From: Haliotis rufescens
Taxonomy: Eukaryota
Assembly: GCF_023055435.1 (NCBI RefSeq)
Contig: NW_025963968.1
Location: 5,828,001 to 5,892,000, forward strand
Length of the DNA: 64,000 bases
Direction: 5' to 3'
The first letter of the stretch is position 1; each line of letters opens with the position of its first letter. This document shows, piece by piece, positions 1,035-63,733 of the stretch. The translations under genes and the position numbers were made by a program. The notes under the pieces are model-generated. The model saw only the letters and a list, made by a program, of their open reading frames with translations, was not told the origin of the DNA and made no database searches.

Positions 1035-1894
1035 ATGAGGACGGCTATAATTCTACCTGCTGCCATCCTGGCCTGTTTGTGTGTCATAAGTGATGCCCGT
1101 TACATTCGTAAGTATTGAAGTCAATCGCATCGTCATACTCATTACCCGGAGCAAAAAAATATGAAATTTATTGATGTCCCTCTGAGTCGTTTAACTACTC
1201 ATTACCTCTAGCAAATATTGGGTATTCTTCCTTATTCCTGACTGTTGACCTCCTATCATCAGTGTGTTTTAACAATGATTCGTTGATGGAAATCGTTATG
1301 ATTTTATTGTCTCCATCCTTCTGGACTTTCATGGGCCATACACACTATCATGCATACCTCTGAGGAACTGACGGCAGAGGACCAATATAGCTGTTAAACC
1401 GTTGGCTGTTCAATCTCAAAACTTTGTTTCCGACATTGAAACAATGTGGGACACCCTTTCTTTTGTGATCGTAGAAGTCATGTTGCCGAAAACGCCATAC
1501 TCACTCACTCTAATACCTAGGCGATTTAATTCCAGGTGCCTCAGGATTGCAAGTGCAGCCCAGGACTGTCAAAGGGTATGCCAACCAACAACCAAGGGTG
1601 ATTATCATCAACCAAGACAAACCTAGGCAGGCTGCACGGGTACCTACTGCTGCACGATCTGGATACGCACCACGACACGGCAACGGATACAACAACTTCC
1701 TCAACGACTACCTCCTTGCTGATGCCCTTGATATCAACCATCCCGGTCTATTGCACGGCTTCAACCAGATTGCCTCCCCTTACGCCCCCTCCGCCCGTAC
1801 AGGTAGAAACAGCTACGACCCTCTCTACGCTGCGCTCATCTTGGACCAGCTTGACGCTCAGCCAATTGGAGCCAGCTCCGCCATCGTTGGTTAG
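1035..1894 (+). CDS. Family A secreted protein, copy A1 (143 aa); CDS join(1035..1107,1536..1894)
   Basis: ATG at 1035 follows acceptor ttttacAG (1008-1009). The 73-nt coding part reads MRTAIILPAAILACLCVISDARYI (signal-peptide-like). Donor GTAAGT 1108; acceptor ttccAG 1534-35 joins in phase 1 to ORF 1547..1894. AATAAA at 2003. Non-coding exon 1 would lie just upstream of the window. Confidence 0.9.
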
Positions 1895-2329
1895 ATGATG
1901 TGCTTTTAACGAAAAATGTTTTCTCGGAGTGACATGAGACGGATTTTTTTGAGTTTTGAGTTTTTGAGATTATGCTTTTGTGTCATGGTTTCTGTCTAAT
2001 GAAATAAAATGTTTAATTGATTACCTTGCATTCATTGTTATCGATTGTTCCACCACACTCACTGTATCGGTATGGTCTTGAATGTATGTATACATATGTA
2101 TATTTATATGGCACTACTTGTAAATGGGGTGAGAATATTAAAGAGAATTTCATCGCACCGAACACATCATACGAACATACACTACACACTATGAATCACA
2201 CAGCACATTACACATTATACATTATACATTAAGGTCATACACTACAAGTTAAGTCAAAGCACGTGATGCAGGGAAGACATATGTACATATGCTCACACTT
2301 ATAGACATAGATATGTTCAGTGCATTGGT

Positions 2330-2333
<4 letters not shown>

Positions 2334-2395
<62 letters not shown>

Positions 2396-2410
2396 AGATA
2401 TACATATAGA
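2334..2410. repeat. (TA)n/(TAGATA)n microsatellite
   Basis: Direct reading; much shorter in the A2 copy. Confidence 0.95.
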
Positions 2411-2746
2411 TATGCCTATATTTTATTGACATTAGTGATAAATACTTTTCAATGGAAGGATATTCGCAGTTATATATTTATAAACATAATGTGCATATTC
2501 TATTTTCTCTACTTACATTGTGCCATTGAGTTAAGCTTAAACCGAGGTTTTCAGGTAATGATGGTATGGTTCAATGATTTGTAACTATTTAAACATAAAT
2601 AATAATGATAATAATAATAATAATAATAATAATAATTCTATAATACTACATATAATTCATTACACACCATGCATTGCACTTATATAATTACACACCATGC
2701 ATTACACTTATATAATTACCCACTCTTAATCACACTACCGCACTCT

Positions 2747-5029: not shown

Positions 5030-5113
5030 TGACGTCACTGTGTCACGATGCTCCCTGAAGGATGTCCGGCTGGCGTATAAAAGTATTCCTCATTTCTCTG
5101 GACACCATCATTC
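5030..5113 (+). promoter_or_regulatory. A2 core promoter: CRE palindrome TGACGTCA (5030), TCACGATG (5043), TATAAAA (5076), Inr-like TCATT (~5108)
   Basis: Motifs read directly. TATA-Inr spacing is about 32 bp, followed by a short exon with a GTGAG donor. The region is conserved in A3 and A4. Confidence 0.7.
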
Positions 5114-6204
5114 TCCAATTGTAGCCACAGAGCAGCAGCAACAGGTGAGCCAACTGTTTGTTATATTTTCTTTTCAATTTATCTTTTCTTGTAAACCGAC
5201 TGTGGAGTCTAATATCGCTTGTATACTTGATGTATTCACGTATCATGTTCTTCAGCATCCTTATATTATTGTGTATTAAGTACCTTTCCGTTAGAGATCG
5301 CCCCTTGGAAACAGCGGAAGGTCCGGGCTTCGATCCTTGGCCACGTCAAACCAAAATACACAAAAAAGATGATACTTGTTGTTACCCTGTCTGGCGCTCG
5401 GCATTAAAGGGCTAAAGCAAGGACTGGTCGGCTCAGAGTCAGTATACTGTGTCTGAGTGTGGTATTCATGTCAAGGGACGACCGGGTAGCCTGGTGGTTA
5501 AAGCTCATAAGAAATATCCATTGTGCGATTCAGACTACATCATAGGCATATCTTTATGGATCACTATCAGAAGTGATGATACCAGGTGTTCGCCCTAGGA
5601 TGTGCAGGGGCGGTCGGGTAGCCCAGTGGTTAAAACGTTCGCTCGTCACGCCGAAGGCCCGGGTTCGATTTCCGACATGGGTACAATGTGTGAATCCCAT
5701 TTCTGATGTTCCCCGCCGTGATATTGCTGGAATATTGCTAAAAGCGGCGTAAAACCATATTCACTCACTCACTATTCATGTTAAACTGCGGCAATGCCAG
5801 TGGGCTAGCACTATAAAATCGGCATTAGTCCGGACTAGTACAAGCAAATACACAGAAACACACACGTGCATACATGTCACTATATGAGTGCAATAATTTT
5901 GAAAGCGACATTAAACCCCATTTTACCTCACCACCTGTTCGGGAGATGTAAATATATGTGTGCGAATGTGTCATTTGTTAGCTTTCATAAAATCTCAGTC
6001 AGTCAATGTAAATAGTAAACTCTGAACCAAAGCAAATATAATAGTCGCCTAACCATAACTACACCTCAACGTGTGTTGTCATTATGTTTGTTGATATAAC
6101 TTGCATTAAATATTACTTTTCAATATACTATATCATCTTGCATTTAACATTATTGTTCGTTATACATTCACTTTTACAGAACAGAAATTACAACCACCCG
6201 AATC

Positions 6205-7064
6205 ATGAGGACGGCTATAATTCTACCTGCTGCCATCCTGGCCTGTTTGTGTGTCATAAGTGATGCCCGTTACATTCGTAAGTATTGAAGTCAATCGCAT
6301 CGTCATACTCATTACCCGGAGCAAAAAAATATGAAATTTATTGATGTCCCTCTGAGTCGTTTAACTACTCATTACCTCTAGCAAATATTGGGTATTCTTC
6401 CTTATTCCTGACTGTTGACCTCCTATCATCAGTGTGTTTTAACAATGATTCGTTGATGGAAATCGTTATGATTTTATTGTCTCCATCCTTCTGGACTTTC
6501 ATGGGCCATACACACCATCATGCATACCTCTGAGGAACTGACGGCAGAGGACCAATATAGCTGTTAAACCGTTGGCTGTTCAATCTCAAAACTTTGTTTC
6601 CGACATTGAAACAATGTGGGACACCCTTTCTTTTGTGATCGTAGAAGTCATGTTGCCGAAAACGCCATACTCACTCACTCTAATACCTAGGCGATTTAAT
6701 TCCAGGTGCCTCAGGATTGCAAGTGCAGCCCAGGACTGTCAAAGGGTATGCCAACCAACAACCCAGGGTGATTATCATCAACCAAGACAGACCTAGGCAG
6801 GCTGCACTGGTACCTACTGCTGCACGATCTGGATACGCACCACGACACGGCAACGGATACAACAACTTCCTCAACGACTACCTCCTTGCTGATGCCCTTG
6901 ATATCAACCATCCCGGTCTATTGCACGGCTTCAACCAGATTGCCTCCCCTTACGCCCCCTCCGCCCGTACAGGTAGAAACAGCTACGACCCTCTCTACGC
7001 TGCGCTCATCTTGGACCAGCTTGACGCTCAGCCAATTGGAGCCAGCTCCGCCATCGTTGGTTAG
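6205..7064 (+). CDS. Family A secreted protein, copy A2 (143 aa); join(6205..6277,6706..7064); non-coding exon 1 ~5108..5144
   Basis: Direct repeat of A1 offset by 5170 bp with the same splice sites. TATAAAA at 5076 and exon-1 donor CAG|GTGAGC at 5145. Differs from A1 by K>R, R>L and one silent change. Confidence 0.9.
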
Positions 7065-13675: not shown

Positions 13676-14481
13676 CTAACCAACGATTGGCTGAGCGTCA
13701 AGTTGGTCCAAGATGAGCGCAGCGTAGAGAGGGTCGTAGCTGTTTCTACCTGTACGGGCGGAGGGGGCGTAAGGGGAGGCAATCTCGTTTAAGCCGTACG
13801 ATAGACCGGGATGGTTGATATCAAGGGCATCAGCAAGGAGGTAGTCGTTGAGGAAGTTGTTGTATCCGTTGCCGTGTCGTGGTGCGTATCCAGATCGTGC
13901 AGCAGTAGGTACCCGTGCAGCCTGCCTAGGTCTGTCTTGGTTGATGATAATCACCCTTGGTTGTTGGTTGGCATACCCTTTGACAGTCCTGGGCTGCACT
14001 TGCAATCCTGAAGCACCTGGAATTAAATCGCCTAGGTATTAGAGTGAGTGAGTATGGTTTACGACGTTTTCGGCAACATTGCAGCATTACTACTACGATC
14101 CCAACAAGAAAGGGTGTCCCACATTGTTCCCATGTCGGAATTTGAGTTTTGAGATCGAGCCAACGCTTTAACAGCTATACTGGTCATCTGTCGTCAGTTC
14201 CTCAGAGGTGTTCATGATGGTGTGTAGTCCCATAGGATGGAGACAATAAAATCTTAACAATTTCCATCAACGAATCATTGTTAAAACACACTGATGATAG
14301 GAGGTCGACAGTCGAAGAATACCCAATATTTGCCAGAGGTAATGTGTAGTTAAACGACGCTGAGGGACATTCATAAATTGTAAGACTGAATTCTCCTGAT
14401 ATACTTACGATTGTAACGGGCATCACTTATGACACACAAACAGACCAGGATGGCAGCAGGTAGAATTATAGCAGTCCTCAT
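13676..14481 (-). CDS. Family A secreted protein, copy A3 (137 aa); complement(join(13676..14016,14409..14481)); exon 1 ends 15057
   Basis: MRTAIILPAAILVCLCVISDARYN exon of 73 nt, GTAAGT donor, ttccAG acceptor, in frame with ORF 13676..14005. TATAAAA at 15119-15125 (-). Lacks the GASSAI hexapeptide of A1/A2. Confidence 0.9.
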
Positions 14482-15089
14482 GATTCGGGTGTTTTTAATT
14501 TCTGTTCTGTAAAAGTGATGCAAGATGTCAACAAAAATAATGGCAGCACAATTTCAGTCGTATTCGTTGTTAGGGTATCATTACATTTAACACTGACTGA
14601 GATTTTATGAAAGCTAACCAATTAATGACACATTCGCATACATATATTGATATTCAAAATTATTGCGCTTATAAAGCGACGTGCGTGTGTGTATGTATGT
14701 GTGGCTGCTTATACTATTCTGGACTAATGCCGACTTGATAGTGCGAGCCCACTGGGATTGACGCATTTTAACACGAATACCCCACTCAGACACAGTATAC
14801 TCCGAGCCGACCACGCCTTGTTTTAGCCCCTTAATGCCAAGTACCATCTTATCGAACCCCGGACCTTCCGCTCTCCAGAATGGCGCTCTACCACTAGACC
14901 ACGGAGGCGTTCTCTAACGAACAGGTCCTTAATACACAAAGGTTGTAGAAGAACATGACACATGAAAACTTCTAGTATACAAGCAATATTAGACTCCACA
15001 GTCGATTTACAAGAAAAGATAAATTGACAAGAAAATATAACAAACAGTTGGCTCACCTGTTGCTGCTGCTCTGTGGCTACAATTGGAGA

Positions 15090-15172
15090 ATGATGGTGTC
15101 CAGAGAAATGAGGAATACTTTTATACGCCAGCCGGACATCCTTCAAGGAGCATCGTGACACAGTGACGTAAC
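15090..15172 (-). promoter_or_regulatory. A3 core promoter (TTACGTCA, TCACGATG, TATAAAA)
   Basis: Reverse-complement homolog of the A2 promoter. Confidence 0.65.
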
Positions 15173-19760: not shown

Positions 19761-19779
19761 ATGTGGTGTGATATATAAT

Positions 19780-21353: not shown

Positions 21354-22500
21354 CTAACCAACGATTGGCTGAGCGTCAAGTTGGTCCAAGATGAGCGCAG
21401 CGTAGAGAGGGTCGTAGCTGTTTCTACCTGTACGGGCGGAGGGGGCGTAAGGGGAGGCAATCTGGTTGAAGCCGTACGATAGACCGGGATGGTTGATATC
21501 AAGGGCATCAGCAAGGAGGTAGTCGTTGAGGAAGTTGTTGTATCCGTTGCCGTGTCGTGATGCGTATCCAGATCGTGCAGCAGTAGGTACCCGTGCAGCC
21601 TGCCTAGGTCTGTCTTGGTTGATGATAATCACCCTTGGTTGTTGGTTGGCATACCCTTTGACAGTCCTCGGCTGCGCTTGCAACCCTGAAGCACCTTGAA
21701 TGAAAATGTTAAGCTATTAGAGTGAGTGAGTATGGTTTACGGCGTTTTCGGCAACATTGCAGCATTACTACAACGATCCCAACTAGAAAGAGTGTCCCAC
21801 ATTGTTCCCATGTCGGAATTTGAATTTTGAGATCGAACCAACGCTTTAACAGCTATACCGGTCCTCTGTCGTCAGTTCCTCAGAGGTGTTCATGATGGTG
21901 TGTAGTGCCAATGTAAGTCCCATAGGATGGAGAAAATAAAATCATTACAATTTCCATAAAAAATGCACGATTCTTAAAGAAATTTCAAAATAGACTCTTG
22001 AACATCTGTGGAGACTGCGCTAACGATATGGGTGAATACAAATATTTGTTTATTATTTTGATCTTTTTGACCACCCCGAGGCTTGTGACAATGCACAATA
22101 TTTCAAGAATCTTTTCACCTGTTAAAATTCACAATATTAGGCTCAAAATAGGCGCTTGGACAACTTGGAGACTGCGCAAATGATATGGGGAATAAAAATA
22201 ACGTTTTTCGATTTTGAAAGATTTTTTACTTCTTAAAATACAAAATTTTAGGCTCAAATAGACTCTTGGACATACTGATGATAGGAGTTCAACAGTCAGG
22301 GATAAAGAAGAATACCCAATATTTGCCGGAGGTAATGTATAGTTTAACGACTCTGAGGGACATTCATGAAATGTATATTATTATTCCGGGTAACAAGTAT
22401 GACGATGCGATTGACTTCAATACTTACGAATGTAACGGGCATCACTTATGACACACAAACAGGCCAGGATGGCAGCAGGTAGAATTACAGCAGTCCTCAT
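21354..22500 (-). CDS. Family A secreted protein, copy A4 (137 aa); complement(join(21354..21694,22428..22500)); exon 1 ends 23160
   Basis: MRTAVILPAAILACLCVISDARYI 73-nt exon, GTAAGT donor, ttcaAG acceptor, in frame with ORF 21354..21683. TATAAAA at 23222-23228 (-). Confidence 0.9.
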
Positions 22501-23191: not shown

Positions 23192-23275
23192 AATGATGGT
23201 GTCCAGAGAAATGCGGAATACTTTTATACGCCAGCCGGACATCCATCAAGGAGCATCGTGACACAGTGACGTAAC
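23192..23275 (-). promoter_or_regulatory. A4 core promoter (TTACGTCA, TCACGATG, TATAAAA)
   Basis: Reverse-complement homolog of the A2 promoter. Confidence 0.65.
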
Positions 23276-33788: not shown

Positions 33789-33824
<36 letters not shown>

Positions 33825-34394: not shown

Positions 34395-34479
34395 TTTTTC
34401 AAGGAGAAGCTATCATAACGATCACTGCATCTGTGCAAAGAACCCTGCAGCAAACCTGCAGAATCCTTCTCTTGAATAA

Positions 34480-42322: not shown

Positions 42323-43970
42323 TCACACGCGAGGCACAGAGGGCTTGGGGGGTAGGTCAAGAGCCTCTCGGAGATGCATGGAGTAGAGGTCATGAGGGCT
42401 GTAACCATGGGGACCTCCAGCTGGTTTAGCTGCTGGTGATGCTGCCTGTTCTGCTGTTGGTTTTGGTGCTGCTGGGTGGCCTTGTTGTGGAGGAAGGTCT
42501 AGTGCCTCAGCGAGGTGCAGTGAGAACAAGCGGTCGTACTGGTTCTGGTGACCAAGGGAAGAGGACTTGGAAGCTTGATACTGAGCCGCACCCTTGCTGG
42601 CAGGTGCTCCAAGGGTTTCAGCGAGCTGGTGCAAGTTGTGATGTCCTCCATAGTGAGGAAGCTCCATTTCAGCGAGCATGTTGAGTCTCAACATGTTGTT
42701 GAGGGCGTCGTATCCACGTTGGGAAGCACCAGGGTAGAGGCCAGATGCAGCCCCTGCTGGAGAGTTGGGTTCTGGGATGGGAACCCGTGGGGAGGCTGCT
42801 GTTTTAGCTGGCGCAGATGCTGGGTCAGCCAATGGATTCGCAGGGGAGCGGGAAAAAGGGTCTGCTGAGAAAGGGGCAGGGAAAGGGTCTGCAAAGTTGG
42901 GGCCAGTGGCAGAGAAAGGGCCTAAAGAGATCTGGGAAGGGGAAGGGGCAAATGGGGCTTGAGCCTGGTCAGGGGCGGAAGCACCACGGGGATTAGGGGA
43001 GTCCTCTTTGATGATGATGATAGTATTCTGGGGAAAGGGTTGGTGTCTGAGTGTGTTTCTGCTGGAAGCGCGGATAGGCTGAGTGTCGTATCCTTGCTCG
43101 GTCTGGGAACCGTAGTGATCAGGTAGGCCATTGGCAACGACATACTGGGGCTGTGGAGCTGGGACATAGACTTTTTGAGCTTGTTGGGCTGGGGGATAGA
43201 CGTTTTGAGTTTGTGGGGCTGGGGGATAGACTTTCTGAGCTTGTGGGGCTGGGGGATAGACGTTCTGAGCTTGTGGGGCTGGGGGATAGACTCTCTGAGT
43301 TTGTGGGGCTGGGGGATAGACTTTTTGAGTTTGAGGGCCTCGGGGGTAGACGTTTTGAGTTTGTGGGGCAAGGGGATAGACATTTTGAGTTTGTGGGGCT
43401 GGAGGGTAGACATTTTGAGTTTGTGGGGCTGGAGGGTAGACTTTTTGAGTTTGTGGGGCTTGTGGGGTTGGTCGAGCAGGAGCCACCTGTTTGACTTGAG
43501 TGGACTTGATGGCTTTTCTTTGGAGTGTTTTAGTGGGATTGTAGATAATCTGTCTTCCAAATCTTGGGGTTTGGACCCTGCGATTTATCAGCTGATTGTA
43601 AGGATTGATAATATATGGTGAACCTGCAAGAAAACCAAAAGTCCATTTAAATACAAGCGACGAAACCCTTTTCCATATGGGTCCGACATTTTGATATTCC
43701 CCTTTTGGGTGAGTGAGTGAGTGAGTGAGTGAGTGAGTGAGTGAGTGAGTGAGTGAGTTGGGTTTAAAGCCGCTTTGAACGGAACTCAGACAGTATCATG
43801 GCCACATCATGAAGCAGTTCCGTCGCATGCCAGCTGGATCTATGGACAACTCAGGAAACAGTATGCTCTTGATGACACATGTTAGGAATGTACGTACCAA
43901 TAACGAAAGCGTCGGTCACAAGACAGCAACATCCTAGTACGGCCATGGCCAACATGATGACGGCTCTCAT
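42323..43970 (-). CDS. Family B secreted Pro/Ala/Gln-rich repeat protein B2 (457 aa); complement(join(42323..43623,43898..43970)); exon 1 ends 45221
   Basis: 73-nt exon MRAVIMLAMAVLGCCCLVTDAFVI, donor GTACGT, acceptor tgcAG, in frame with ORF 42323..43486. Ten QNVYPPAPQT-type repeats. Clear paralog of B1 (shared QPQYV.ANG.PD.YGSQ, MLRL.MLAEMELPHYGGH.NLHQLA). TATATAAA at 45289-45296 (-). Confidence 0.9.
43708..43758. repeat. (GAGT)n microsatellite (expanded SINE tail remnant) in B2 intron 2
   Basis: Direct reading; shorter homolog at ~33347-33360 in B1. Confidence 0.9.
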
Positions 43971-44384
43971 CGTATCTATATGATGCCCAATAAGCTTTCT
44001 GAAAACAACATTTGAACAAATGAAAACAATACTTCTATTGGTTGCCCAGCGTTGTCAGTGTACGATTAACCACTGGATCATTTGTGGTGGATTTTCACAC
44101 GTGAGTGAGTTAGTTATATCATCGATCACATACTCTCCTCCAACTTGGTTGATGCATGTCATCGTATCCCAATTACTTGGGTCGATGCTCATGATGTCAA
44201 TCACTGAATTGTCTGGTCCAGACTCGATTATTTACAGACCTTCATATAGCTGCAATATTGCTGAGTGTGGCGTTAAACAACGAATAAACAAACATGTGGA
44301 GAAAAAGTCCATTTTTTTATCACTTCCGTAAACTCTTGGACATACATATGACACTTACAAACCCAGAAACATGATCAGAACAAT

Positions 44385-44830
44385 ACTTAACCCAACAAAG
44401 TAAGCAGATATATGTAGAATGGATGGAAATAAACTTCCTTATATACAGCACACCCTATACCACACGTGGTAATAACTTAACCCAACCAAGTAAGCAGATA
44501 TATGTAGAATGGATGGATACAAGCTTCCTTAAACACAGCACACCCTATACCACACGTGGTAATAACTTTACGAAACCAAGTAAGCAGATATATGTAGAAT
44601 GGATGGAAATAAACTTCCTTAAACACAGCACACCCTATACCACACGTGGTAATAACTTTACCCAACCAAGTAAGCAGATATATGTAGAATGGATGGAAAT
44701 AAACTTCCTTAAACACAGCACACCCTATACCACACGTGGTAATAACTTTACGAAACCAAGTAAGCAGATATATGTAGAATGGATGGAAATAAACTTCCTT
44801 ATATACAGCACATCCTATACCACACGTGGT
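44385..44830. repeat. 90-bp minisatellite, 5 copies, in B2 intron 1
   Basis: TAAGCAGATA recurs at 44401, 44491, 44581, 44671 and 44761. Confidence 0.95.
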
Positions 44831-45220
44831 AGACAATTACTACTTGAGTACGCTCAGTGTACCTTATGTCGCCATGATTCTACGTTATTCATTAACGCTA
44901 AGTTGTAACTTTTCTCTTAGTGTATCGAAACATCTGTGTCAACTCGGTCTTGCAGTTCAGAAGGTCATATGTACGTAATGTTAGACCATTTGAGTGAGTG
45001 AGTGTGGTTTTACGCCGTTTTAGCAAGAATTCAGCAATATCACGCCGGGGAACACCAAAAATCGGCTTCACACATTGTACCCATTTGGGGAAGCAAAACC
45101 GGGCCTTCGGGGTGACGAGCGAACGCTTTAACCACCAGGCTACCCTGCCGCCTCAAGATCATTGGAAGAAAAAACTGTAACTAAGAAATAAAAAAAGTTA
45201 CAAGCAAACATTGAACTCAC

Positions 45221-45329
45221 CAGTTGCTGCTGTTGGTCTGCTGTTGACGAAGGTGGAGAAGGAATGATACTCGTGACGACCGTCGGGGTTTATATACCTC
45301 CATCGTCCACCGGTCAACAGTCATCGTGA
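45221..45329 (-). promoter_or_regulatory. B2 promoter and non-coding exon 1 (TCACGATG 45322-45329, TATATAAA 45289-45296, donor GTGAGT)
   Basis: Canonical TATA, TCATT Inr-like site about 30 bp downstream, and an exon ending CAGCAGCAACTG|GTGAG, similar to the family A exon-1 end CAGCAGCAACAG|GTGAG. Confidence 0.7.
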
Positions 45330-48339: not shown

Positions 48340-48407
<68 letters not shown>

Positions 48408-51400
48408 TTCTTTATTTCCTTCAAATGAATGAAGATATGCAGATATAATTATGTTACATTATGTTACATGTTTAACATGAATTGGGGGTATATTTACATA
48501 TGTTCATAAACATCCAAGTGTTTTAGCAGGTATCGCCATTTCCTTATAAAGCGGCTTACATTAATTATTACTTCTGCCCACACATCTCTTTCTCGTTCCA
48601 TAATTCTATTTGACATCCACCAAGTAAAGACGCAAGAATAACATCAATATCTTTCTCCCAGATCTTAACAAAAACATTTACATCCGGGATATCATATATT
48701 GTGTTAAAAAGTAAATTTCGGTCATTCATATTGATCGTGCAAGACATAAACACGTGCTTTACAATATCATTGGCAACAGTTTTACAATAGCATTCTCTAG
48801 AGACAATTTCAGCTGATCCATAGAATACAAGTCTTGCAATATTAGTTAAATGGTCATACTTCTCCAAGGCTAGTTTCCAGAGATAGTGTTCATTACTTGA
48901 TCTTATACTAACACATCTTGACAGTCTTGAATTCAGATGGACATAAAAAACATCATTTCGATGAGATTTAATAGCATCATTCACGGCCTTGGACTAGCAT
49001 TTCTTATTAATAAATTGACAATTATTGACACAGTTAACAAGTGTATCATTTATGTTATACTTTTGTACAAGTTGTAGCATATTATATATCGGATATTTTC
49101 TACTCCATACATTGCATTTAAAACTATCTGTACACATAAATTGACCCAGGCGAACTAGAAACATTACTTTAAAAACACAGTTATACTTTGCATTACATAG
49201 CTTTCCTAAGACGTAGAGTGCTCTTTTATCAATGTAATACTGTAGTGGCATGATACCGATAGCATCCAATACAACAATACTGAACTCTTTTACATAATTG
49301 ACGTTGTACAACTTCAAGCATTTCATACTCTTAAAGAGGAAGTTTACCCCATACGCTGCATCCATAGAGGCCACATGATAAGATTACCCTCTCCCAGATT
49401 CGTGCTTCAGATATAGGATTCAGACCACCAAAGTACAGCCCATTATTATGGTTAGTGTTGATGAGTACACGTAACTTTTCACATGCAGATTGTGTACGTT
49501 CAAGTGATGATTTATCTGTGCTAAGATATACACCTGCATATTTAATAGATTTCCTTTGTGGAACATCCATATCGCCAAATGATACATTAGTGGTTAGAAC
49601 CTTATTGTTTGGGCATCCAAAGTATAGAACTGCACTCTTGCTTACATTATATTTTAGCTGCCACATATGAGCATAGTTTTGAACGACGTAAAGAAGATTT
49701 CGTAGGCCTTTATTTGAGATACTCATCAAAGTAGTGTCGTCAGCAAGAAGAATCCCAGGACATTTACCCCATGGCAGAATTAAACCAGAATCTGAGTTTT
49801 CAAGTTCATATAGGAGGTCATTAATAAATAGCGTGAAAAGCCAAGCGGACATTACTCTACCTTGACCTACTCCTTGATTCACGGGGAATGCATCCGACTT
49901 AAATCCTTCAAAGCATACAAATGATTTCATAGAGCTGTAGGAGAGTCTTAATATTCTCCATAGTTTACCCGTTATTCCTATATCATACAGTTTAATAAAT
50001 AATCCATGAAGCCATACCCGATCAAATGCTTTTTCGTTATCTAAGAATGCACAGTATACAGGCAACATCCTTTCATTGTAATATGCAATATTTTATGTTA
50101 ACGTAAGTACAGCCGTTTCAGCACCATAGTGACGTCTAAATCCAAATTGCAAAGGATGTGGAAATTCTATGTTATCATCTACCCACGAGTCTATTCTGTT
50201 GAGAAGAAGTCTTTCAAAGAGTTTGTTTAATACAGGCGGCATTGTTATTCCTCTATAATTGGCAGGGTCATATTTTGATTTACCATGGCCTTTGTGTATA
50301 GGAAGGATTTGACCTATAGAAAATGATTTTGGAATGTATTCAAAGTTAATATTGCCATTGAATAGTAAGGCAATATGACACAGCAGAGATCTACCAGCTT
50401 TCTTTATATGTTAATTTACAACACCGTCAGTATCAAGACGTTTTACTGCACAATGGATTTCATCTTTAGTGAATGGACAATGCAGTGGCGATCTGGTGTC
50501 GTTACCTATATCCTCTATTGTTTCAATATTAGCAACTCACTCTTTAAGATTCTGAGCATGTGCATAGTCTCATTTTACATCAGGACAAGGAGTAGCTAGT
50601 GTATGAAAATAAAGTTCAAACAGATTGCAAATATCCTTTTTTCCTCGTAACAAGTTTGAGTGCCATAGACAAGCTTTTCAGTATTACGTTTGTAGCGTTT
50701 GTAACGTTTTGTCGTTTTGTAGAATTCTTTGACATCTACTTCTGCTGCCGCGCAGATTTCATTAAATCTATCTTTAGATAGATACTCTGGTACTTTGCAT
50801 GGCGATGTTTCTTACGGAAGAGATGTTTACTTTCTTTATATTTTGCGTAGGCAGCATCTTTTTTGTCTCTAACTTTACTGTTACGGCCAAAATGATAAAA
50901 TTATTTTTGGGTATTTATGTGTTCCCGATAGATTGTCGGAGAATTGCTATGATTAACCCTAGTGCAAATAGCAGTGATTTATTGTCAAGTTTGTTTTTTA
51001 GCGGGTAGCAATTTTCGTGGTTACAAAGGGGGATAACTGCTGGTAGGTTTTATTTTGGAAGTATGTCGCTTGCCTGCCTGCCATCATTGCCATGTGGGTT
51101 ATTCTTTTGGAAGAATAGATGGTCTACAAACAGTATGAATTACTTTATTAGCAGTCTTTGCTTGGAAGCATTTTGTGTTAGTATTATTAACTTATAAGCA
51201 GCACTTTTTATAGTATTCAGTCACGTTATTTAGTCTGTATTTTCACAAGGCTTTCGAAGCTGTTTGCTGCATTCAAAACTCGCTCGCTTTGCACGAGGTG
51301 TTAAAAATAGATTTTGCAACAGGTTGTTTTGTGAGGGCTTTTCAAACTTATTATTTAACAGTACATGCTTATTTATTGAAATATTGGTTATATGACTTGA

Positions 51401-53110
51401 CTGACATGTTTCGGTTCCCCAGAATTTTAAAGTTGTAGACTTTGTAAAAATATATCTTTATTGGTGAAGTATGTTACATAAGGTTGTAATAGTATCACAA
51501 TGTAAAATAGCATTATGTCATGCTATATTTTCTTATTTATTGCAGTCAATCTGTCACAAGTGAGACTTCAACACGCTATGAAATATGAACTGAACTTTGA
51601 TATAAACTTTCACTACAGTCTTCAGTCTTGCTTGTTTTCTGAATTGGCGATAGGGCCTATAGACCTATCTACTATAGAGAAGAACATTTACCATTAGTAA
51701 CCCATTGACGGCGATACTTTCGCATTTCTTTATGTAGATTATTAAAACCATCCTTCTTCCAGCAAGGTTTAAGATAGGCTCTAAAGCGTGTTGATGGAAT
51801 ACTACCGGCGGCAGAAGCATGTAGAGAACCTGTGATAAAGTCACAGTAGTATTCAATATAGTCTGCATTGCTATCAAAGTGAGCGTTGTTAATTTGAGTG
51901 CCACGGAAGTAATTTTCCGTTTCATATCGATATAGCATTAGGTCAGTTTCACTTGCTTTAGTCCAGTTTAAGATCTCTCCATGATAGTTCCCAATATTTA
52001 CAGAAAGATAAATACAAACAAATATTGGTAGGTGATCTGAGACGTTATATGGAATGCTAGTGTATATGACATATCCAGTAACACTGCTTAGTGAATCAAT
52101 ATCTATAAAGATTCGTGGTTTTACTTTGTTACATTTACTATTGAAAGTGTACTTGTACTCACCAAGTGGAACCACCGAATAAGGTGACGTTCGTTAAGCA
52201 GTCGTAATAAGCACCTAGCCCTGGGTCTCCTAGAAGGTAGGTTGGGTATTCTTGAGAAAGAATATCATAGCGTTCCATAACATGGTACAGTTCTTCAAAG
52301 TACACACTGTCTAGGACATTTGTTGATGGCAGTCTAGTCCCAAGTACATACACATGGCTAGTGCCAATGTGTAGTTTAATGCACAGTACGTGGCGGCTGT
52401 AGTGGGTGTCAATAGGAGTAACTTTGCACCAGTCACCTTTCCGTACAAACACCTCCAGAACCTCGCTGGTGCTGGTTAGAGTCAACTGGATTTCGAATAC
52501 ACATTAAAGTTGTCGTGGAATGTTTCCAGAAACTGTAAATGTTCCCTGTCTAGCCAGTGCTCTGTAACAAGCACGACGTCACATATGTCGAGTTTTTTGC
52601 ACAGCTCTGTTGTTCCATGTTTAATACCACGAATGTTCTATGTTAAGTAGGGTCATCAGTGTACATACGTTGATGGCCTCGGTTGCAGAATGAGGCATCA
52701 CAGTTAATACTCACTCTCGCCTTGTTTATCATTAGAGTACCATGTGTTACGGGGAACCCATTCTCAACAGTTCACGTTCTCGGGCCAGAATGTGTTATCG
52801 TCCAATATTGTTTTGGCACACTGTACAGGAACTGCAATGCGGATGGTATACGTTGGGTTCGAGCCTTCCCAGTGTCATAAGAAAATTATATTTGTAATGG
52901 TCACACCCCATTATTTGGCGTAGTCAACGATAGCGTCTTTCACAATGTCAAATGATTCGTCTGCTCTCATATATGACATCACGAGTCTCCTGTTCTTGTA
53001 TTTAGCTACACCTGTGAAAGATCGTCTCCACTGATTATCAAACCGCACAGATCTTAAATGTTGATGTTCCATTTCATGAAGAGTACAAGGTATACAGTGA
53101 AACGACAACA
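48340..53110 (-). mobile_element. Degraded APE-RT LINE (copy 1) with (TATC)n 3' tail
   Basis: APE motifs (VTEHWL, SDHLPI), RT motifs (FLDNEKAFDRVW, GVGQG, LLADDT), C-terminal Cys/His motif, AATAAA plus microsatellite tail at 48340-48416; multiple frameshifts. Confidence 0.9.
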
Positions 53111-53139
53111 TCTATAGTATATGTCAGAAGAGGTTCATA

Positions 53140-56100
53140 TAAGTATGTATCATATTGATTATTGGTGTTATTTAATGGACGATTAGCATGTGCTATTTAC
53201 AATTGTACACTTGCTTACAATATATACATTGTTTAGTATAAGCAGCTTCGGATGACTTCATCCCACTTTTTAACTGCATCACCAATATTTATCATGCTCT
53301 CTACCCATACATTGTAGTCTAATTCATCTTCAAGTTGTTTAGGTAAACCGCCAAGCAGAAAAGTCAGAAAGCTATCATCGTCTGTCCAGATTCTCACAAA
53401 TATTTTAACATCAAGCAAATCAATGATTTTCCATAACCTATGTTCTCATCCAGATCGTATTGTAAGATATCTTGACAGAGATAATCTGCTCAGAAGCGCA
53501 TTGTATAGTATTTTTTTGTCGTGTAGGTGAATCTGTTCTTTCACCGGTTTTGACCATAATCGTTTCTTAATGAAATTTGAACACATTATATAATCATTAA
53601 CCTCGTCAGACAAATTATATTTGGAGACTAGATGTAGCATGCTAAAGAAAGGTGATTTCGTGTGCCACTTGTTCTTATTAACTTGTGTTGTTTTATATCT
53701 AAACTGTCCAAGTCGGACTAGAAACATTTGTTTGAAAATATACATTAGGTTTGAATTACATAGCTTACCAAGGAGCAAAAGCTTTTGTTGATCAATGTAT
53801 CCTTGTACTGATATAACACCAATTGTGTCTCTCTCTATTTCTTTGTGCAAACGCTTATTAAAACCCTGGATTTTCTTACAGAAATAGCGTTGAGTGATTT
53901 CGAGCATTTCATATTCCTTTAATGATAGTTTTCCCCACACATTACATCCATATAAGCCACAGGGTAATATCACTCGTTGCCAGATGCGCACGGCGGCTAT
54001 AGGATTAAGTCCACCAAAGTACAGGCCAGAATCATAGTTTACATTTATCAATTTTCTCAGTTTTTTCACATACTAACCTCGTTCCTTCTTCAAAGGTTTT
54101 AACAGTACATATGTGCACTCCCGCATAGACAATTGCCTTTTGAACAGGTAATTTTACCTAACCAATGTAAAGATGTTCAGGCGACACTGTTTTTTTACTA
54201 CATCCAAAAGTTAGGACAGCACTTTTGAACACATTGTATTTTAACTGCCACTTGTTACCATAATTTTCTTCAACGTTTAGGAGCATTTGACCTGTTTTAG
54301 TTACGGCTGATCAAGGTCGTGTCGTCTGCTAACACTAACCCTGGGCATCGTCCCCACGGGAGACATAGTCCACAACCGGAATTGCTTAGTTCATGAAGTA
54401 AATCGTTTATATAAAGAGTAAAGAGCCATGCTGATATGACACGACCCTGACCTACACCCTGTATAACAGGGAAAACATCAGATTTGAAGCCAGCAAAGCT
54501 AACACATGAGTACATAGAATTGTAAGATAGCCGTAGAATTCTCCAGAATTTACCATTGATACCAAATTTATGTAATTTGTAGAAGAGACCGTTAAGCCAA
54601 ACACGAGCGAAGGCTTTCTCGTTATCGAGAAAGGCACAATAAACTGGTGACTTTCTTTCGTTAAAGTATGAAATACTTTCTAGAAGAGTGAGAGCCGCCG
54701 TTTCAGCACCAGCATTTTTCCTAAATCCAAACTGTAGGGGGTGACGAAAGGCTACATCGTCGCTTGTCCATTTTTCGATTCTGTTGAGAAGCATTCTTTC
54801 GAAAAGCTTACTTAGGAGTGTTATGCCCCTGTAGTTAGATGGATCACTTTTACTTCTTCCTCGTCCCTTATGTACTGGTAAGATTTCGCCAATATGATAC
54901 ATTTTGGGTATATATTCATGTTTAATAATAGCATTGAATAATACCATAATATGCTTTAATAAAGATCTTCCCGCATTTGAATATGTTCGTTTGTGAGCCC
55001 ATCAGGTCCTGGAGATTTATTGTTTTTCAGTCCTTTAACTGTACTTACTACCTCTGCAATGGTGAATGGTCTCTTCAATGGATGGTTAGCAGTTACATCG
55101 GTATCAGCATCAGATGTTTCGTTGTTTTCAATATTTGTGACTGAACATATTACTTCATCAGCAAAAGAGCAGTCAAAATGACTTTGCATGGTTGGGATTG
55201 ACAAGTCTCTAAAGTATTTACCAAAGATTCCACAAATACCTTCCGCGTTACTACTTTGATTATATAAAGAAGTTTGTGTATTTACAAATGTAGCCCTTAG
55301 TTTTGTGATATCGTCTTGCAGTTTTAAAATATTCATGTACATCTATTTCAGCTGCCTCATAGAGTCTTCTAAAACTACGCTTTGCTTCTTTATATTTAAC
55401 AAAGTTCTCATCGTTCTTAGCATGTGACCTGCCATTCTCTTGCCAATGTCGTCTTTTACTTTGATTTCATCATGTAATAACTTCAGATTGTCTTTTTCCA
55501 GTTGGGTTTGAGGTAGGGTTTAAACTTCGTTGATGGGATACTTACTGCAGTAGATGCATGGAGGGCTTCTGTAATATACTTATTATACGTTTCAATATAT
55601 TCATTATGGGATGGGAATAGGGACAAATTGCATATGTCTTTACGAAAGTAATTTTCAGTTTCATAACGATAGAGCATAAGATCAGTATCACACGCTTTCT
55701 TCCAATTGAGCTTATATGCACCATATGCTTTTTTAGGACAGTCATTTGTTATACACAGAAGGATAGGCAGATGGTCTGAGACAGTATATGGTATATCGGT
55801 ATCAATGGTAAAACCAATAATCCAGCTGTTCGAAGTATACACTGTCTAAGATGTTAGTGGAAGGTAATCTAGTTCATATAATGTGTTACTACCTGTTTGT
55901 AGACTTACTCCGATTACATTTTGGCTTTGTGGTGTATTGATAACGGATAGCCTACACCAATCGGCTTTACGAAAGTTGCTATACCACCTGACCCACGCTG
56001 AGAAGTACTGGTACAGCTGCATTTATAGTAAACATCAAAATCATCATGTATAGTGTTCATAAGGGAAGCATTTTGTTCACTTAATCAATGTTCAGTCACA

Positions 56101-57172
56101 AAGAATAGATCTGTGCTGTCTAGTCTGGCACATAACTGATGTGTACCGTGCATAATGCCTCGTATGTTCTAAGTTGCTATTCGATTCATAACGAGTAGTA
56201 GCATGGCTTGTATGGCTTTTCATTCTCGGCTCCTGAGTTGTCATATGTATACCAGGAACTTATCAAACCGCACAGATCGTAAATGTTGATGTTCCTCAGG
56301 TTGGCTGGATATATTGTCTTGGGTTGAAGTTGGCTTGTCTCTCCTGCTTTCAGCGTGTTTCGTCGTGTCGGGCACGTGCTCGTGGGGTTGGCTATCATCC
56401 AAAAGGAGTAAGCTGTCCTCTGGGCTTGGTGGTGGATGGATATCAGCGAAGGTTGGGACTGTGCTGTTTTGTACAGCATGGTGTGTTACATCATAGCCTG
56501 GACTGAAGTTTGCTTCAGCAGTGAATGGCCTTGAGTTGGGCCGAACTGGAGGCCGGGTCTCGCCACAGCTTGGGTTGTTAACTGCCTCTGAATAGAGCAG
56601 CTTGTTTCTGGTATTCATGCTGTCAATCTTGCCACCAATTGCACAGGCTGTTTTATTTATCCCATTTATTGTTGTATTCAGAGTGTCTTTCATGTCCTTA
56701 ATGACAACATCTTTCCTCTGGATTTCACTTTTTAAAGTAGTGATTTCAGATTTCATTTTGTCTACATTACACTTGAGCTTCTGGGCTTCACTGTAGTATA
56801 TTTTGATTTCATCTTTCTTTTATTCAAGTGTCCTTATCCTATCCCGCATGTCACTCTCATATTTAGACTTGAAATCTTGCAGGTTCTCATTTACATCCAT
56901 GAACTTTCCACACATATCTCCATGAAAAACACATCAATTTAGTGAACATACGAGCTAGTGTCCTTATTGTTCAGACTATTGTCGGAGCTTTCTATGTCAG
57001 TATAATCGTCTGATCGAGTTTTCTGTTTACTCATGACTTCACTCTGTATCACATGAGCTGGCACGGATCCATGTATGTATCTATACAGCAGGTACACATC
57101 AGAAGCATACTTTTCTAGAACAGTTTTCAATTGTCCAGATCGTAGAATGTCACAGTCAAGTGAGTCGGTGAT
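53140..57172 (-). mobile_element. Degraded APE-RT LINE (copy 2) with coiled-coil ORF1 remnant
   Basis: ORF1-like coiled-coil 56241..56756; SDHLPI, KSPGPDGL, NYRGITLL, FLDNEKAF, GVGQG, LADDT. Confidence 0.9.
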
Positions 57173-60734: not shown

Positions 60735-61126
60735 CTGCAACTCACAAGGTACCGATACCCGGTAGACAGCTGGCTGAAGACACCCAAACCACCTAAACCT
60801 TTCAACTAGTTAACCCAGGAGGGTTACATAAATAGTAAATATAATTTATCATTCGGGCCAATGTAACAGAAATCACCGTAATTTAACAACGTGAAAAGTA
60901 AGGCATGTCCATGCAATTGAGGAAAATACATTATGATAAACCATATGCCATTTGGAAAAAAAGGAATATCGGAATGCTTCGTTATTTGCGTTATAGAGAC
61001 AAATAACGAAATATTTCGTCATTCGTGTTTCACATTCTTGAGTGACGGATAACGAATTATTTCGTCATACTTCTTTCAAATAACTCAATGACGAATTACA
61101 TTGTTGTCCGTGTCTGATAACGGTTC

Positions 61127-61548
61127 CATCGTCTTAGGAATGGTGCTTGGTGCTATGTGGAAAAACCTTGCCACAGCTGAAGAAGATTCTCCCGTTTGCA
61201 GTCGGCCGATGGCGTTGTTGCGTTTGGCTTCCGTCAGTCGTGGAATTTTTTCGCTGTTCACTTCCTATAAGATTGTGAAGGCATGGACATGAAAACCCAA
61301 CGTCATTATAGCCCTACAAGTGACGTTGCACGTGCACGTTATGTTGGTGTGTTTCGGCACCAGGCTCTCACGTGGTTGTGTTTTTGCGATATTTCCATCA
61401 TTTTACCAAATTTCCTAATCATTTCCACAAATCAATCCCAGTCCATGTAGAAATGATCAATTCATTTTTGGCATTAATTTTATATGGATTTCGGAAACAC
61501 TGTCACATTACGATTTTACTAATTTTGCGTTTCTTTTTTTGCAGAGTA
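61127..61548 (-). mobile_element. Tc1/mariner 5' relic (TIR plus transposase N-terminal HTH)
   Basis: TA|TACTCTGCAAAAAAAGAAACGC end at ~61548. The minus frame from 61246 reads (I)PRLTEAKRNNAIGRLQTGESSSAVARFFHIAPSTI, typical of a Tc1 paired-like HTH. Confidence 0.7.
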
Positions 61549-62063
61549 TATCAATGTTTCCCTTCTTCAGGAATCTTTTCAGAAAACATTGTCTCAGTCC
61601 ATGTCTGTGCAACGTGTGATGTTAGCGAACCATTTCATCAGTCGTCATTGATATGTGTAAAAGACGAAATAATTCGTTATGCTTTATTCAGTAATTCAAA
61701 TGCGGGTAACGAAATATTTATACACTTCCATAAACATGTAGAATGTCAGTTTCCCTTCCTCCATAGCACACGCTGTGTAACCCCGATGTAATGTACATAA
61801 TGTACAAACTTCATATACACTCTCACCTTACAGGTACCCAACCGCTTCACATTTCATGTCCACAACATGAAACTATAACGCATGAATAAAACTAAAATGC
61901 GAATTTCAAATTCCCTTTTCATGCCCCAGTGAGTTTATTTACAAGCGTAGGATACATGGATGATGAGCTTTGAACTGTAAATCTCGTCTAGTGAAACACA
62001 CAAGTACTACAAATTCAAGAATTTATTTGAGTAAAGTGAGGACAGATGACGCACAAATGAAAG

Positions 62064-63581
62064 TTAGTAATAGTAATCACTGGAACCGTAGTAGTATCCT
62101 CCTCCGTTTCCTCCTTTTCCATTTCCACCGTTTCCGCCATTTCCACCGTTTCCACCGTTTCCTCCACCGTTTCCACCGTTTCCTCCACCGTTTCCACCGT
62201 TTCCACCACCGCCGCTTGAACTTCCGAAAGCTTGGGCGAAAGCACTGGCAGCAGCATTGGCTGAGGCCCCAAAACTACCAAATCCACCATCACTACCACC
62301 AGAGCCGAAACCGGAACCACTTGCACTTGCTCCGGCGGAGGCACTCGCGCTTGCGGCGGCAGAGGCAGCAGCTCTGGCAGCAGCTGCAGCAGCAACCTGG
62401 ACACGAGCGTAGGCGGAAGCACGGGCCTCAGCAGCGGCAGAAGCACTAGCTCTAGCTGATGCAGACGCTGATGCACTGACCCTGGCACGAGCACTGGCGA
62501 CAGCCTGTGCGCGAGCTCTGGCAACTGCTCTTCCGGCAGCTGAAACTGAAGCCCTTGCCCTGGCGGTGGCAGAAGCGAAAGCACTTCCACTTGACCTAAC
62601 TCCAGCAATGGAGGCTCTTGCAGCAGCACGTGCTCTTGCAACAGCTCTAGCGTAAGATCTTGATCTGCCCTCAGCTGAACGCACTGCTGAAACAGAAGCC
62701 TCAGCACTAGCTTGAGCACTGGCGAAAGCCCTCCGAGCTGATCGAACCACGGCCTCGGCGCGTGCACGTGCCCTGGCAATGATGGAAGATCCACGAGCAT
62801 TAACAGAAGCCGCAGCACTAGCAGTGGCACTAGCAAGAGCAGATCCATCAACGCTTCCTCCATTTGCAGAGGCCTGAGCCGTGGCCTCGGCATAAGCGCT
62901 GGCTTGATCGTAAGCATCCTGAGCCGATTGTAGTTCGGCAGTGGCTGTCGCAAGTGCTTGGGCCTGAGCGCTGGCACTGGCACCTCCAAATCCACCATTT
63001 CCTCCAGAGCCTCCATTCCCAAAGCCTCCTGCATTAGCATTGGCGCTGGCACTTGCACTGGCGCTGGCATCCACTAGAGATGAGAGCCGTCCTACGAGGT
63101 TATTATAACTGTTTGCCCGAGCACTAGCAGAGGCAGAAGCTGAGGCCCTGGCGCTGCCGGATCCACCACCTCCTCCACCGTTTCCACCATTTCCACCGTT
63201 TCCGCCGTTTCCACCCTTTCCGCCGCCATTACCGCGACCCCAGCCATAGCCTAAAATACATTCAAAAAGTAGTTCAGTTTTATGTTTGTATTGGCATAGA
63301 GGTCAGGATATTATTCACAAAGGTGCGTAGCTTTGGGATGTGTAATATAACTTCACATTGGATGGATTAATTTTACTTTGTATTTCCAGTGTCGACATTG
63401 AACTTTGTAGATGAGCAGGGGGCTAGCTGCTCTTGAGAGAAGGTTTCTTAGGAGTGGAAGTACCGTTCCCTGTCCATATGGTGCCAAACAATTATTATTC
63501 AATCCACATCCATGTCCTCTAAACCCTCCCACTCCTCCCCTCCACACATCCCCATTCTCATCCACACGCACACATGTCATT

Positions 63582-63616
<35 letters not shown>

Positions 63617-63733
63617 ATCATCAAACTGTAAAAGTCCCCAACCAACGGTCCTCCCCAATCCATCTTTCTTACCGTAATAGTCTGCACCCACGCTGAAAGC
63701 GAGGCAGAGAACCAACAGTGGGACCCTCAACAT
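62064..63733 (-). CDS. GAAP: Glycine-, alanine- and asparagine-rich shell matrix protein (415 aa); complement(join(62064..63250,63673..63733))
   Basis: Signal peptide MLRVPLLVLCLAFSVGADYY|GYGWGR, GGN repeats, an Ala/Ser/Arg-rich core (AQALATATAELQSAQDAYDQASAYAEATA) and C-terminus YYYGSSDYYY match my recollection of Haliotis GAAP. Canonical GTAAG/AG phase-1 intron; AATAAA at 61934-61939 (-). Confidence 0.85.
63578..63615. repeat. (CAT)n microsatellite in GAAP intron
   Basis: Direct reading; source of the spurious poly-Met ORF. Confidence 0.95.

What the first reader, a model, noticed from the sequence alone, without database searches (positions are those of the whole stretch)
1035..63733. Cluster of six related secreted-protein genes beside the abalone shell-matrix gene GAAP: candidate biomineralisation/mantle-secretome locus
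Seen: every intact non-TE gene I can reconstruct here encodes a signal-peptide protein with a low-complexity, Cys-free mature chain (4 x A, 2 x B, GAAP). All are built as a signal exon, a phase-1 intron and one large exon. Known: GAAP is a Haliotis shell organic-matrix protein, and molluscan shell proteins are often lineage-specific, repetitive and tandemly clustered. Inference: A and B are co-expressed mantle/shell (or periostracum) proteins of one family, which I cannot match to any named family.
Basis: partly seen in the sequence, partly recalled or inferred. Interest (0 to 1): 0.9.

Follow-up and report, generated by a model that had tools for sequence, protein, structure and literature searches.

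The report
Abalone-only secreted disordered-protein gene cluster
Red abalone has a roughly 105-kb cluster of 13 intact genes for two related, abalone-only secreted disordered proteins next to the known shell-protein gene GAAP, but nothing yet shows that these proteins go into the shell.

Summary
The window is Haliotis rufescens, contig C190. It carries four A genes (137-143 aa), two B genes (457 and 673 aa) and a clear GAAP orthologue. Each has a signal-peptide exon, a phase-1 intron and one large exon, and each mature chain is Cys-free and basic.

Five of my six A/B spliced models equal RefSeq proteins. The cluster is larger than reported: 9 A and 4 B genes over about 105 kb, with five A units 99% identical.

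A and B are one family. They share a 73-nt signal exon, colinear motifs, and a homologous TATA promoter with a TCACGATG element and a short non-coding first exon. GAAP shares none of this.

No relative was found outside Haliotis, there is no Pfam domain, and both proteins are predicted to be disordered.

The mantle/shell reading is untested. The one available test is negative: the deep H. laevigata nacre and prismatic proteome holds GAAP peptides but no A or B motif.

The assembly gap is intergenic and touches no gene model.

My best guess, at about 0.4, is a mantle-edge or periostracum matrix material.

The parts
1010..1894 (+). Gene A1 (143 aa). Signal exon 1010-1107 (ATG at 1035), phase-1 intron, large exon 1536-1894. 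Its predicted promoter and non-coding exon 1 lie just before the window start (C190:5827873-5827974).
   Evidence: Spliced product equals RefSeq P0001.
5043..7064 (+). Gene A2 (143 aa). TCACGATG at 5043-5050, TATA at 5076-5082, predicted non-coding exon 1 about 5110-5144, signal exon 6180-6277 (ATG at 6205), large exon 6706-7064.
   Evidence: Spliced product equals P0011.
13676..15158 (-). Gene A3 (137 aa). TCACGATG at 15158-15151, TATA at 15125-15119, predicted exon 1 about 15091-15057, signal exon 14506-14409 (ATG at 14481), large exon 14016-13676.
   Evidence: Spliced product equals P0009.
21354..23261 (-). Gene A4 (137 aa). TCACGATG at 23261-23254, TATA at 23228-23222, predicted exon 1 about 23194-23160, signal exon 22525-22428 (ATG at 22500), large exon 21694-21354.
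   Evidence: Spliced product equals P0008.
30816..35750 (-). Gene B1 (673 aa model). TCACGATG at 35750-35743, degenerate TATA at 35718-35711, predicted exon 1 ending at 35644, signal exon 33630-33529 (ATG at 33601), large exon 32764-30816.
   Evidence: No RefSeq twin was returned, so this is the least certain model.
31900..32561 (-). B1 decapeptide array: about 22 copies of a 30-bp unit coding PAPRAQNVYP.
42323..45329 (-). Gene B2 (457 aa). TCACGATG at 45329-45322, TATA at 45296-45290, predicted exon 1 about 45265-45221, signal exon 43998-43898 (ATG at 43970), large exon 43623-42323.
   Evidence: Spliced product equals RefSeq P0003, which is named 'adhesive plaque matrix protein-like'.
43152..43460 (-). 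B2 decapeptide array: about 10 copies of PAPQ[AT]Q[NK]VYP.
62064..63758 (-). GAAP orthologue (415 aa). Signal exon about 63758-63673 (ATG at 63733), phase-1 intron of 422 nt, large exon 63250-62064.
   Evidence: Colinear with H. laevigata GAAP transcript CLC_21 from the signal peptide, across the splice junction, to the C-terminal YYYGSSDYYY.
36229..36392 (.). Assembly gap. It is intergenic, between B1's promoter and B2's 3' end.
48568..56756 (-). Two degraded LINE copies (reverse-transcriptase fragments at 49331-50068 and 54297-54947) separating B2 from GAAP. They are not part of the family.

Best explanation
A and B are the short and long forms of one Haliotis-restricted family of secreted, basic, Cys-free, intrinsically disordered structural proteins.

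All 13 genes use the same promoter type: TCACGATG about 33 nt before a TATA box, followed by a short non-coding exon. They are therefore probably switched on together. The A genes have been amplified recently, which suggests a need for high output.

The proteins share a short beta-prone strand (VIIINQD or IIIIKED) and two or three acidic-hydrophobic helices capped by proline. B adds arrays of a Tyr-Pro-Pro decapeptide.

I infer, but have not shown, that they self-associate and are cross-linked through tyrosine into an extracellular coat. The most likely product is periostracum or another organic layer laid down by the mantle edge beside GAAP, not a major protein occluded in nacre or prismatic mineral.
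For: Shown:
- Gene models and secretory leaders.
- A-B homology.
- The shared promoter and first exon. Twelve of the 14 TCACGATG sites in 154 kb sit in these promoters at fixed spacing.
- 9 A and 4 B genes, with 5.17-kb units 98.9-99.6% identical.
- dN/dS of 0.3-0.65, and a motif block fully conserved between H. rufescens and H. asinina A, so the proteins are under constraint.
- Predicted disorder with helices exactly at the two motifs.
- C-ending codon preference of 81% in A, which may indicate high expression.

Supporting the mantle link only indirectly:
- GAAP lies 16.7 kb from the B2 promoter and is a proven, mantle-expressed shell protein. Chance adjacency to one of the few dozen known shell-protein genes in a 1.33-Gb genome is unlikely. 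That estimate is my own, not a tool result.
- Composition and pI resemble basic framework proteins.
Against: - There is no expression evidence of any kind.
- A and B motifs are absent from the deep H. laevigata shell proteome, whose search database included a mantle transcriptome. GAAP is present there.
- GAAP shares no protein or upstream similarity with A or B.
- No Logan-derived (transcriptome-run) member appears in the A or B protein clusters. This is weak, because the coverage of that source is unknown.
- Self-association was not supported by modelling, which gave no verdict.
Confidence: 0.4

Rival explanations
1. A and B are secreted structural or adhesive proteins of a non-shell epithelium, such as pedal or epipodial mucus and adhesive, or jaw or radular matrix. 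Their position beside GAAP is coincidence.
For: - They are absent from the shell proteome of a congener.
- They share no cis-element with GAAP.
- The Tyr-Pro-Pro decapeptide arrays recall mussel foot protein 1.
- RefSeq's automatic name for B2 is 'adhesive plaque matrix protein-like'.
Against: - There is no homology to any adhesive protein.
- Adjacency to a shell-matrix gene is improbable by chance.
- A has no adhesive-type repeats at all.
Confidence: 0.3
2. A and B are true occluded shell-matrix proteins of nacre or the prismatic layer. The published proteomes missed them.
For: - GAAP is the neighbour.
- They are low-complexity, secreted and lineage-restricted, like most Haliotis shell proteins.
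- Some supplementary files were cut when stored.
Against: H. rubra B would give several good tryptic peptides, yet none of 12 motif strings occurs in 6.2 million characters of peptide tables and sequences. GAAP strings do occur there.
Confidence: 0.12
3. A and B are stage- or sex-specific secretions, such as larval shell or attachment material, or an egg coat or jelly. Adult somatic data sets would then never see them.
For: - No transcriptome-derived copies appear in the protein collection.
- The family is lineage-restricted and its repeat numbers change quickly.
Against: dN/dS is below 1, unlike the fast-evolving abalone gamete proteins. There is no similarity to known gamete proteins (from my own knowledge of lysin, sp18 and VERL).
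Confidence: 0.1

Closest known systems
[quoted passage not shown]
   Same: It is the immediate neighbour on the same strand as B1 and B2. It has a signal exon, a phase-1 intron and one large exon. It is basic, Cys-free, low-complexity and Haliotis-restricted.
   Different: It has no detectable sequence similarity to A or B in the signal peptide, mature chain or upstream DNA. Its signal exon codes 61 nt, not 73. It is proven in shell proteomes, and A and B are not.
Mussel foot protein 1 (adhesive plaque matrix protein; decapeptide AKPSYPPTYK)
   Same: B has tandem arrays of a 10-residue unit with a Tyr-Pro-Pro core. It also has a basic pI, a signal peptide and a disordered chain.
   Different: The unit has one Tyr and little Lys (PAPQAQNVYP). 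No homology is detected. B also has a non-repetitive C-terminal half with helix motifs. DOPA or hydroxyproline modification is unknown.
Tandem clusters of lineage-restricted secreted matrix genes (vertebrate SCPP cluster; pearl-oyster shematrin and KRMP families). This comparison is from my own knowledge.
   Same: These are arrays of fast-diverging genes for disordered secreted proteins that keep exon structure and signal exon while the mature sequence drifts. Copy number is amplified.
   Different: No link to calcium or mineral is shown for A or B. SCPP introns are phase 0. There is no sequence relation.

Membership tests
GAAP (gene at 62064-63758) | Colinear unique blocks and termini shared with published GAAP sequences | tested here: met
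   The signal peptide, the sequence across the splice junction, the ELQSAQDAYDQ block and the C-terminal YYYGSSDYYY all match H. laevigata CLC_21, printed in Mann 2018 supplement file 27.
GAAP (gene at 62064-63758) | Gly/Ala/Ser/Asn-rich composition, GNG repeats and very basic pI | tested here: met
   A 29%, G 21%, S 17%, pI 11.1. Marie 2010 describes the same features.
GAAP (gene at 62064-63758) | Recovered from the shell and expressed in the mantle in this species | not testable with these tools
   Shown only for H. asinina and H. laevigata.
One A/B family | Sequence similarity beyond composition | tested here: met
   Smith-Waterman 79 against 37 +/- 6, with 0 of 1000 shuffles reaching it. 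Signal exon z is about 9. BLAST E 1e-4. hhalign E 4.9e-4 but probability only 32%. An A profile did not retrieve B from 1.84 billion proteins, so the similarity is weak.
One A/B family | Same exon structure, homologous signal exon and homologous promoter and first exon | tested here: met
   The signal exon codes 73 nt and is followed by a phase-1 intron in all 13 genes. The TCACGATG-N25-TATA promoter and an exon 1 ending CAGCAAC[A/T]G|GTGAG occur in A, B2, B3 and B4, with a diverged copy in B1.
Mfp-1-type adhesive plaque matrix protein (RefSeq name of B2) | Tandem decapeptide repeats | tested here: met
   30-bp period, 10.3 and 21.9 copies.
Mfp-1-type adhesive plaque matrix protein (RefSeq name of B2) | Lys- and Tyr-rich consensus and sequence homology to mussel foot proteins | tested here: not met
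   The unit is PAPQAQNVYP. Only Haliotis proteins were retrieved, and there is no Pfam family.
Mfp-1-type adhesive plaque matrix protein (RefSeq name of B2) | DOPA and hydroxyproline modification | not testable with these tools
   Needs protein chemistry.
Shell-matrix protein (operational definition) | Peptides recovered from cleaned shell | tested here: not met
   Twelve A and B motif strings, including H. rubra variants, are absent from the Mann 2018 supplements. GAAP strings are present as a positive control. This is a congener, not H. rufescens, the shells were bleached, and some files were truncated.
Shell-matrix protein (operational definition) | Mantle-specific expression | not testable with these tools

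The most novel reading that the evidence does not exclude
A, B and GAAP together form an abalone shell and periostracum gene island analogous to the vertebrate SCPP cluster: unrelated-looking disordered proteins that keep a common gene plan and are made by the same mantle cells. B would be a gastropod counterpart of mussel Mfp-1 whose Tyr-Pro-Pro decapeptides are oxidised to tan the periostracum. The amplified A genes would supply a short helix-only partner.
Probability: 0.2. Interest if true: 0.65.

Novelty: new member of a known kind. Interest (0 to 1): 0.4.

Why it matters
If A and B are mantle products, this locus would give abalone biomineralisation research three things. It would offer a defined, co-regulated gene battery with a candidate cis-element (TCACGATG at fixed distance from TATA). 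It would supply protein candidates for the abalone periostracum; I know of none yet, though I did not search for any. It would also provide a clean example of very recent tandem amplification of a matrix gene. If they are not mantle products, it is one more lineage-restricted secreted family of unknown role, already in RefSeq under uninformative or misleading names.

Tried and rejected
- **GAAP word-index search.** It was swamped by low complexity and gave only two irrelevant hits. Identity was settled from the printed H. laevigata sequence instead.
- **A-profile search of 1.84 billion proteins.** Besides A itself it returned only a Marinomonas repeat protein and an unnamed metagenome protein, both multi-stretch artefacts.
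- **B-profile search of this genome.** The 120+ extra hits (C2:46.55 Mb, C556, C512 and others) are translations of 30-bp satellites, not genes.
- **Pfam.** The only hit, PKMT_2nd at E 0.18, was rejected.
- **ESM Atlas.** Nothing usable for A or B.
- **AlphaFold model of A.** pLDDT 48. I used it only for the helix positions.
- **Complex prediction on an A homodimer.** No verdict, so it is not evidence either way.
- **Literature.** No paper holds the LOC or XP identifiers or six motif strings. Searches on the RefSeq name and on abalone mucus proteomics found nothing relevant. The Jackson 2006 supplements have no motif, and no Aguilera 2017 supplements are held.
- **Shared promoter between GAAP and A or B.** Alignment scores were at shuffle level.
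- **Joined spliced models.** Searches used single exons by reference or RefSeq ids returned by the tools. Joining was done only in local scripts, to check the frame and identity with those ids.
Full report
**What the window is.** Protein matches place it in Haliotis rufescens. The genome tool gives its position as contig C190:5828001-5892000. GC content is about 40%. Much of the intergenic space is minisatellite arrays with units of 27, 28, 37, 40 and 43 bp. These arrays produce most of the long but meaningless open frames in the mechanical ORF list.

**Observation check.**
- Stop-to-stop frames give large exons of about 113-118 codons (A), about 430 and 650 codons (B), and about 395 codons (the GAAP-like gene).
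- Upstream of each lies an exon that starts with ATG and codes a hydrophobic leader. It ends one base into a codon before GTAAGT, GTACGT or GTAAGA.
- Joined in a local script, all seven frames are open. The introns are 274-764 nt and all are phase 1.
- Spliced A1, A2, A3, A4 and B2 are identical to RefSeq proteins returned independently by the searches: P0001, P0011, P0009, P0008 and P0003. B1 (673 aa) has no twin among the returned proteins and is the least certain model.
- Mature chains have no Cys and no Trp (one Trp in GAAP). pI is 9.6-9.8, and 11.1 for GAAP.
- All searches used single exons by reference or the returned RefSeq ids.

**The assembly gap.** The gap at 36229-36392 lies between B1 and B2. 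B1's predicted promoter is at 35750-35711, so the whole B1 gene lies on one side of the gap.
- The 193 bases on one flank (36393-36585) are 96% identical to 33898-34090.
- The other flank resumes colinearly with about 33770.
- In that paralogous copy the interval between is about 125 bp of trinucleotide microsatellite.
- The flanks therefore look continuous across a short simple repeat. No reading frame is involved, and I did not fill it.

**The cluster is larger than reported.**
- Searching the genome with the A exon finds nine copies, all on C190 between 5.800 and 5.850 Mb. Seven are on the plus strand, six of them spaced 5.17 kb apart, and two are on the minus strand.
- The B C-terminal region finds four loci: the two in the window, plus a convergent pair at 5.787-5.794 Mb.
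- All 13 genes have intact signal exons with GT donors.
- Five internal A units are 98.9-99.6% identical over their full 5.17 kb, so this is a very recent amplification or ongoing homogenisation.
- dS among A copies is at most 0.06. Among B2, B3 and B4 it is 0.07-0.21, and B1 against the rest is about 0.6. dN/dS is 0.3-0.65 throughout, which means relaxed purifying selection rather than decay or strong positive selection.

**A and B are one family. Protein evidence.**
- Mature A1 against mature B2 scores 79, against 37 +/- 6 for 1000 shuffles (none reach it). The two signal peptides score 60 against 21 +/- 4.
- BLAST gives E 2e-5 for the signal peptide and 1e-4 for the mature chain. hhalign gives E 4.9e-4 but a probability of only 32%.
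- A1 against B1 alone is not significant (69 of 1000 shuffles reach it).
- An A profile did not retrieve B from 1.84 billion proteins. The protein similarity is real but weak.

**A and B are one family. Gene-level evidence.** This is what settles it.
- The signal exon codes exactly 73 nt in all 13 genes.
- The order of motifs is the same: a strand, VIIINQD in H. rufescens A, VIIIKED in H. asinina A and IIIIKED in B, followed by two (A) or three (B) acidic-hydrophobic helix motifs that end in proline.
- Each gene has a conserved module 0.9-2 kb upstream of the signal exon. It consists of TCACGATG, then 25 nt, a TATA box, an initiator-like TCATTC about 30 nt further on, and a 35-45-nt exon ending CAGCAAC[A/T]G before GTGAG.
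- B1 has a diverged copy with the same spacing. It scores 49, against at most 28 for shuffles.
- Twelve of the 14 TCACGATG sites in the 154 kb I examined are in these promoters.
- The genes therefore most likely have three exons, and A and B are probably driven by the same factor. These first exons are predictions, because I had no RNA reads.

**GAAP.** The word-index search failed on low complexity. However, the H. laevigata GAAP transcript printed in the supplement of Mann et al. 2018 (PMC6003135) is colinear with the window's gene. It matches from the signal peptide, through the exact splice junction, to the last ten residues.
- GAAP is a major protein of both shell layers in H. laevigata.
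- In H. asinina the paper describes it as highly expressed in the mantle (PMC2989941).
- GAAP shows no similarity to A or B in leader, mature chain or upstream DNA. All scores are at shuffle level.
- It lies 16.7 kb from the B2 promoter, beyond two degraded LINE copies and satellites.

**Relatives and fold.**
- A has homologues only in H. rufescens and H. asinina (60% identity).
- B has homologues only in H. rufescens, H. cracherodii and H. rubra.
- There is no Pfam family. The profile search found nothing outside Haliotis, and the ESM Atlas gave nothing usable.
- Both proteins are predicted to be disordered: Atlas pLDDT 0.46 and 0.39, AlphaFold 48. The only predicted helices sit exactly on the two conserved motifs of A.
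- A block of about 25 residues around the first helix is invariant between the two species.

**Function.**
- No paper in the library holds the gene or protein identifiers or the motif strings.
- One indirect test was possible. The Mann 2018 supplements hold 6.2 million characters of peptide tables with flanking residues, plus full sequences of identified proteins.
- They hold GAAP strings (positive control). They hold none of 12 A or B motif strings, including the variants of H. rubra, which hybridises with H. laevigata.
- That study searched spectra against a mantle transcriptome and used hypochlorite-cleaned shells.
- I read this as evidence against A or B being abundant in nacre or prismatic matrix. 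It is not evidence about periostracum or secretions that are not occluded in mineral.
- Caveats: the species is different, some files were truncated in storage, and A's peptides in that species are unknown.

**Most likely mechanism.**
- Shown: a co-regulated, recently amplified battery of genes for secreted, basic, disordered proteins under constraint.
- Inferred: they are a structural extracellular material. The isoleucine-rich strand and amphipathic helices would mediate assembly. Tyrosines (5-8% of residues, one per decapeptide in B) would mediate cross-linking.
- A modelling test of an A homodimer gave no verdict.
- Given the improbable chance adjacency to a proven shell-matrix gene (my own rough estimate) and the negative calcified-layer proteome, I put about 0.4 on a mantle-edge product such as periostracum. 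I put 0.3 on a non-shell epithelial secretion, 0.12 on a missed occluded shell protein and 0.1 on a stage- or sex-specific secretion.

**Comparison and novelty.**
- B resembles mussel Mfp-1 only in having a Tyr-Pro-Pro decapeptide array. The consensus differs and there is no homology, so RefSeq's name is misleading.
- The locus resembles the known kind of tandem clusters of lineage-restricted matrix genes.
- The genes are already in RefSeq as uncharacterised proteins. I found no description of the family, its promoter module or its extent.
- I class it as a new member of a known kind, of moderate interest until its tissue of expression is known.

Noticed in passing
window 33300-33350 (minus strand, inside the B1 intron after the signal exon): A partial duplicate of the 3' end of the B1 signal exon with its GTAAG donor lies about 200 nt downstream of the real donor. 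It could act as a decoy splice site.
   Followed up: no
window 44385-44831; also C190:5783540-5784736 and upstream of B4: A 90-bp minisatellite (5 copies in B2) sits in the predicted first intron of B2 and is also present upstream of the signal exons of B3 and B4. The intronic array is therefore retained among paralogues.
   Followed up: partly
window 439-601, 5609-5771, 33079-33235, 41752-41871, about 44990-45150: These are copies of a tRNA-derived SINE with a CACT-repeat tail. One, inside the B1 intron, reaches the Rfam tRNA threshold (33161-33232). SINE tails also lie just before the large-exon acceptors of A and B.
   Followed up: partly
window 7619-13401, 15663-16275, 18508-20988, 23764-27063, 28328-29525, 38503-41711, 48060-48338, 57159-58290: About 17 kb of minisatellite arrays (units of 27, 28, 37, 40, 43, 55 and 69 bp) fill the space between genes. 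Their translations give long false ORFs, and similar 30-bp satellites elsewhere in the genome give false hits to the B decapeptide profile.
   Followed up: yes
window about 5030-5037, immediately upstream of TCACGATG in A2, and the same place in the other plus-strand A units: A perfect CRE-like palindrome, TGACGTCA, lies next to the conserved promoter element in the plus-strand A copies. The minus-strand copies A3 and A4 have TTACGTCA.
   Followed up: no
window 1538-1891 and the other A large exons: The A genes prefer C-ending codons for Asn, Asp, Tyr, Phe, His and Ile: 81%, against 49% in GAAP and 33-46% in the LINE ORFs. This may be a mark of high expression.
   Followed up: partly
window 1010-1034 and 63734-63758: A and GAAP both have TTTTACAG|AA as the acceptor of the signal exon and exactly 25 nt of leader before the ATG. 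I judge this probably coincidence, since nothing else aligns.
   Followed up: partly
C190:5909113-5909628 (minus strand, 17 kb beyond the window end): An open frame of 172 codons rich in Ser and Thr, mucin-like. It is the only other low-complexity candidate in the 40 kb downstream of GAAP.
   Followed up: no
C190:5802158-5803654: A LINE reverse-transcriptase insertion lengthens the first A unit to 8.1 kb. The first and last plus-strand units are only partly alignable with the five near-identical inner units.
   Followed up: partly
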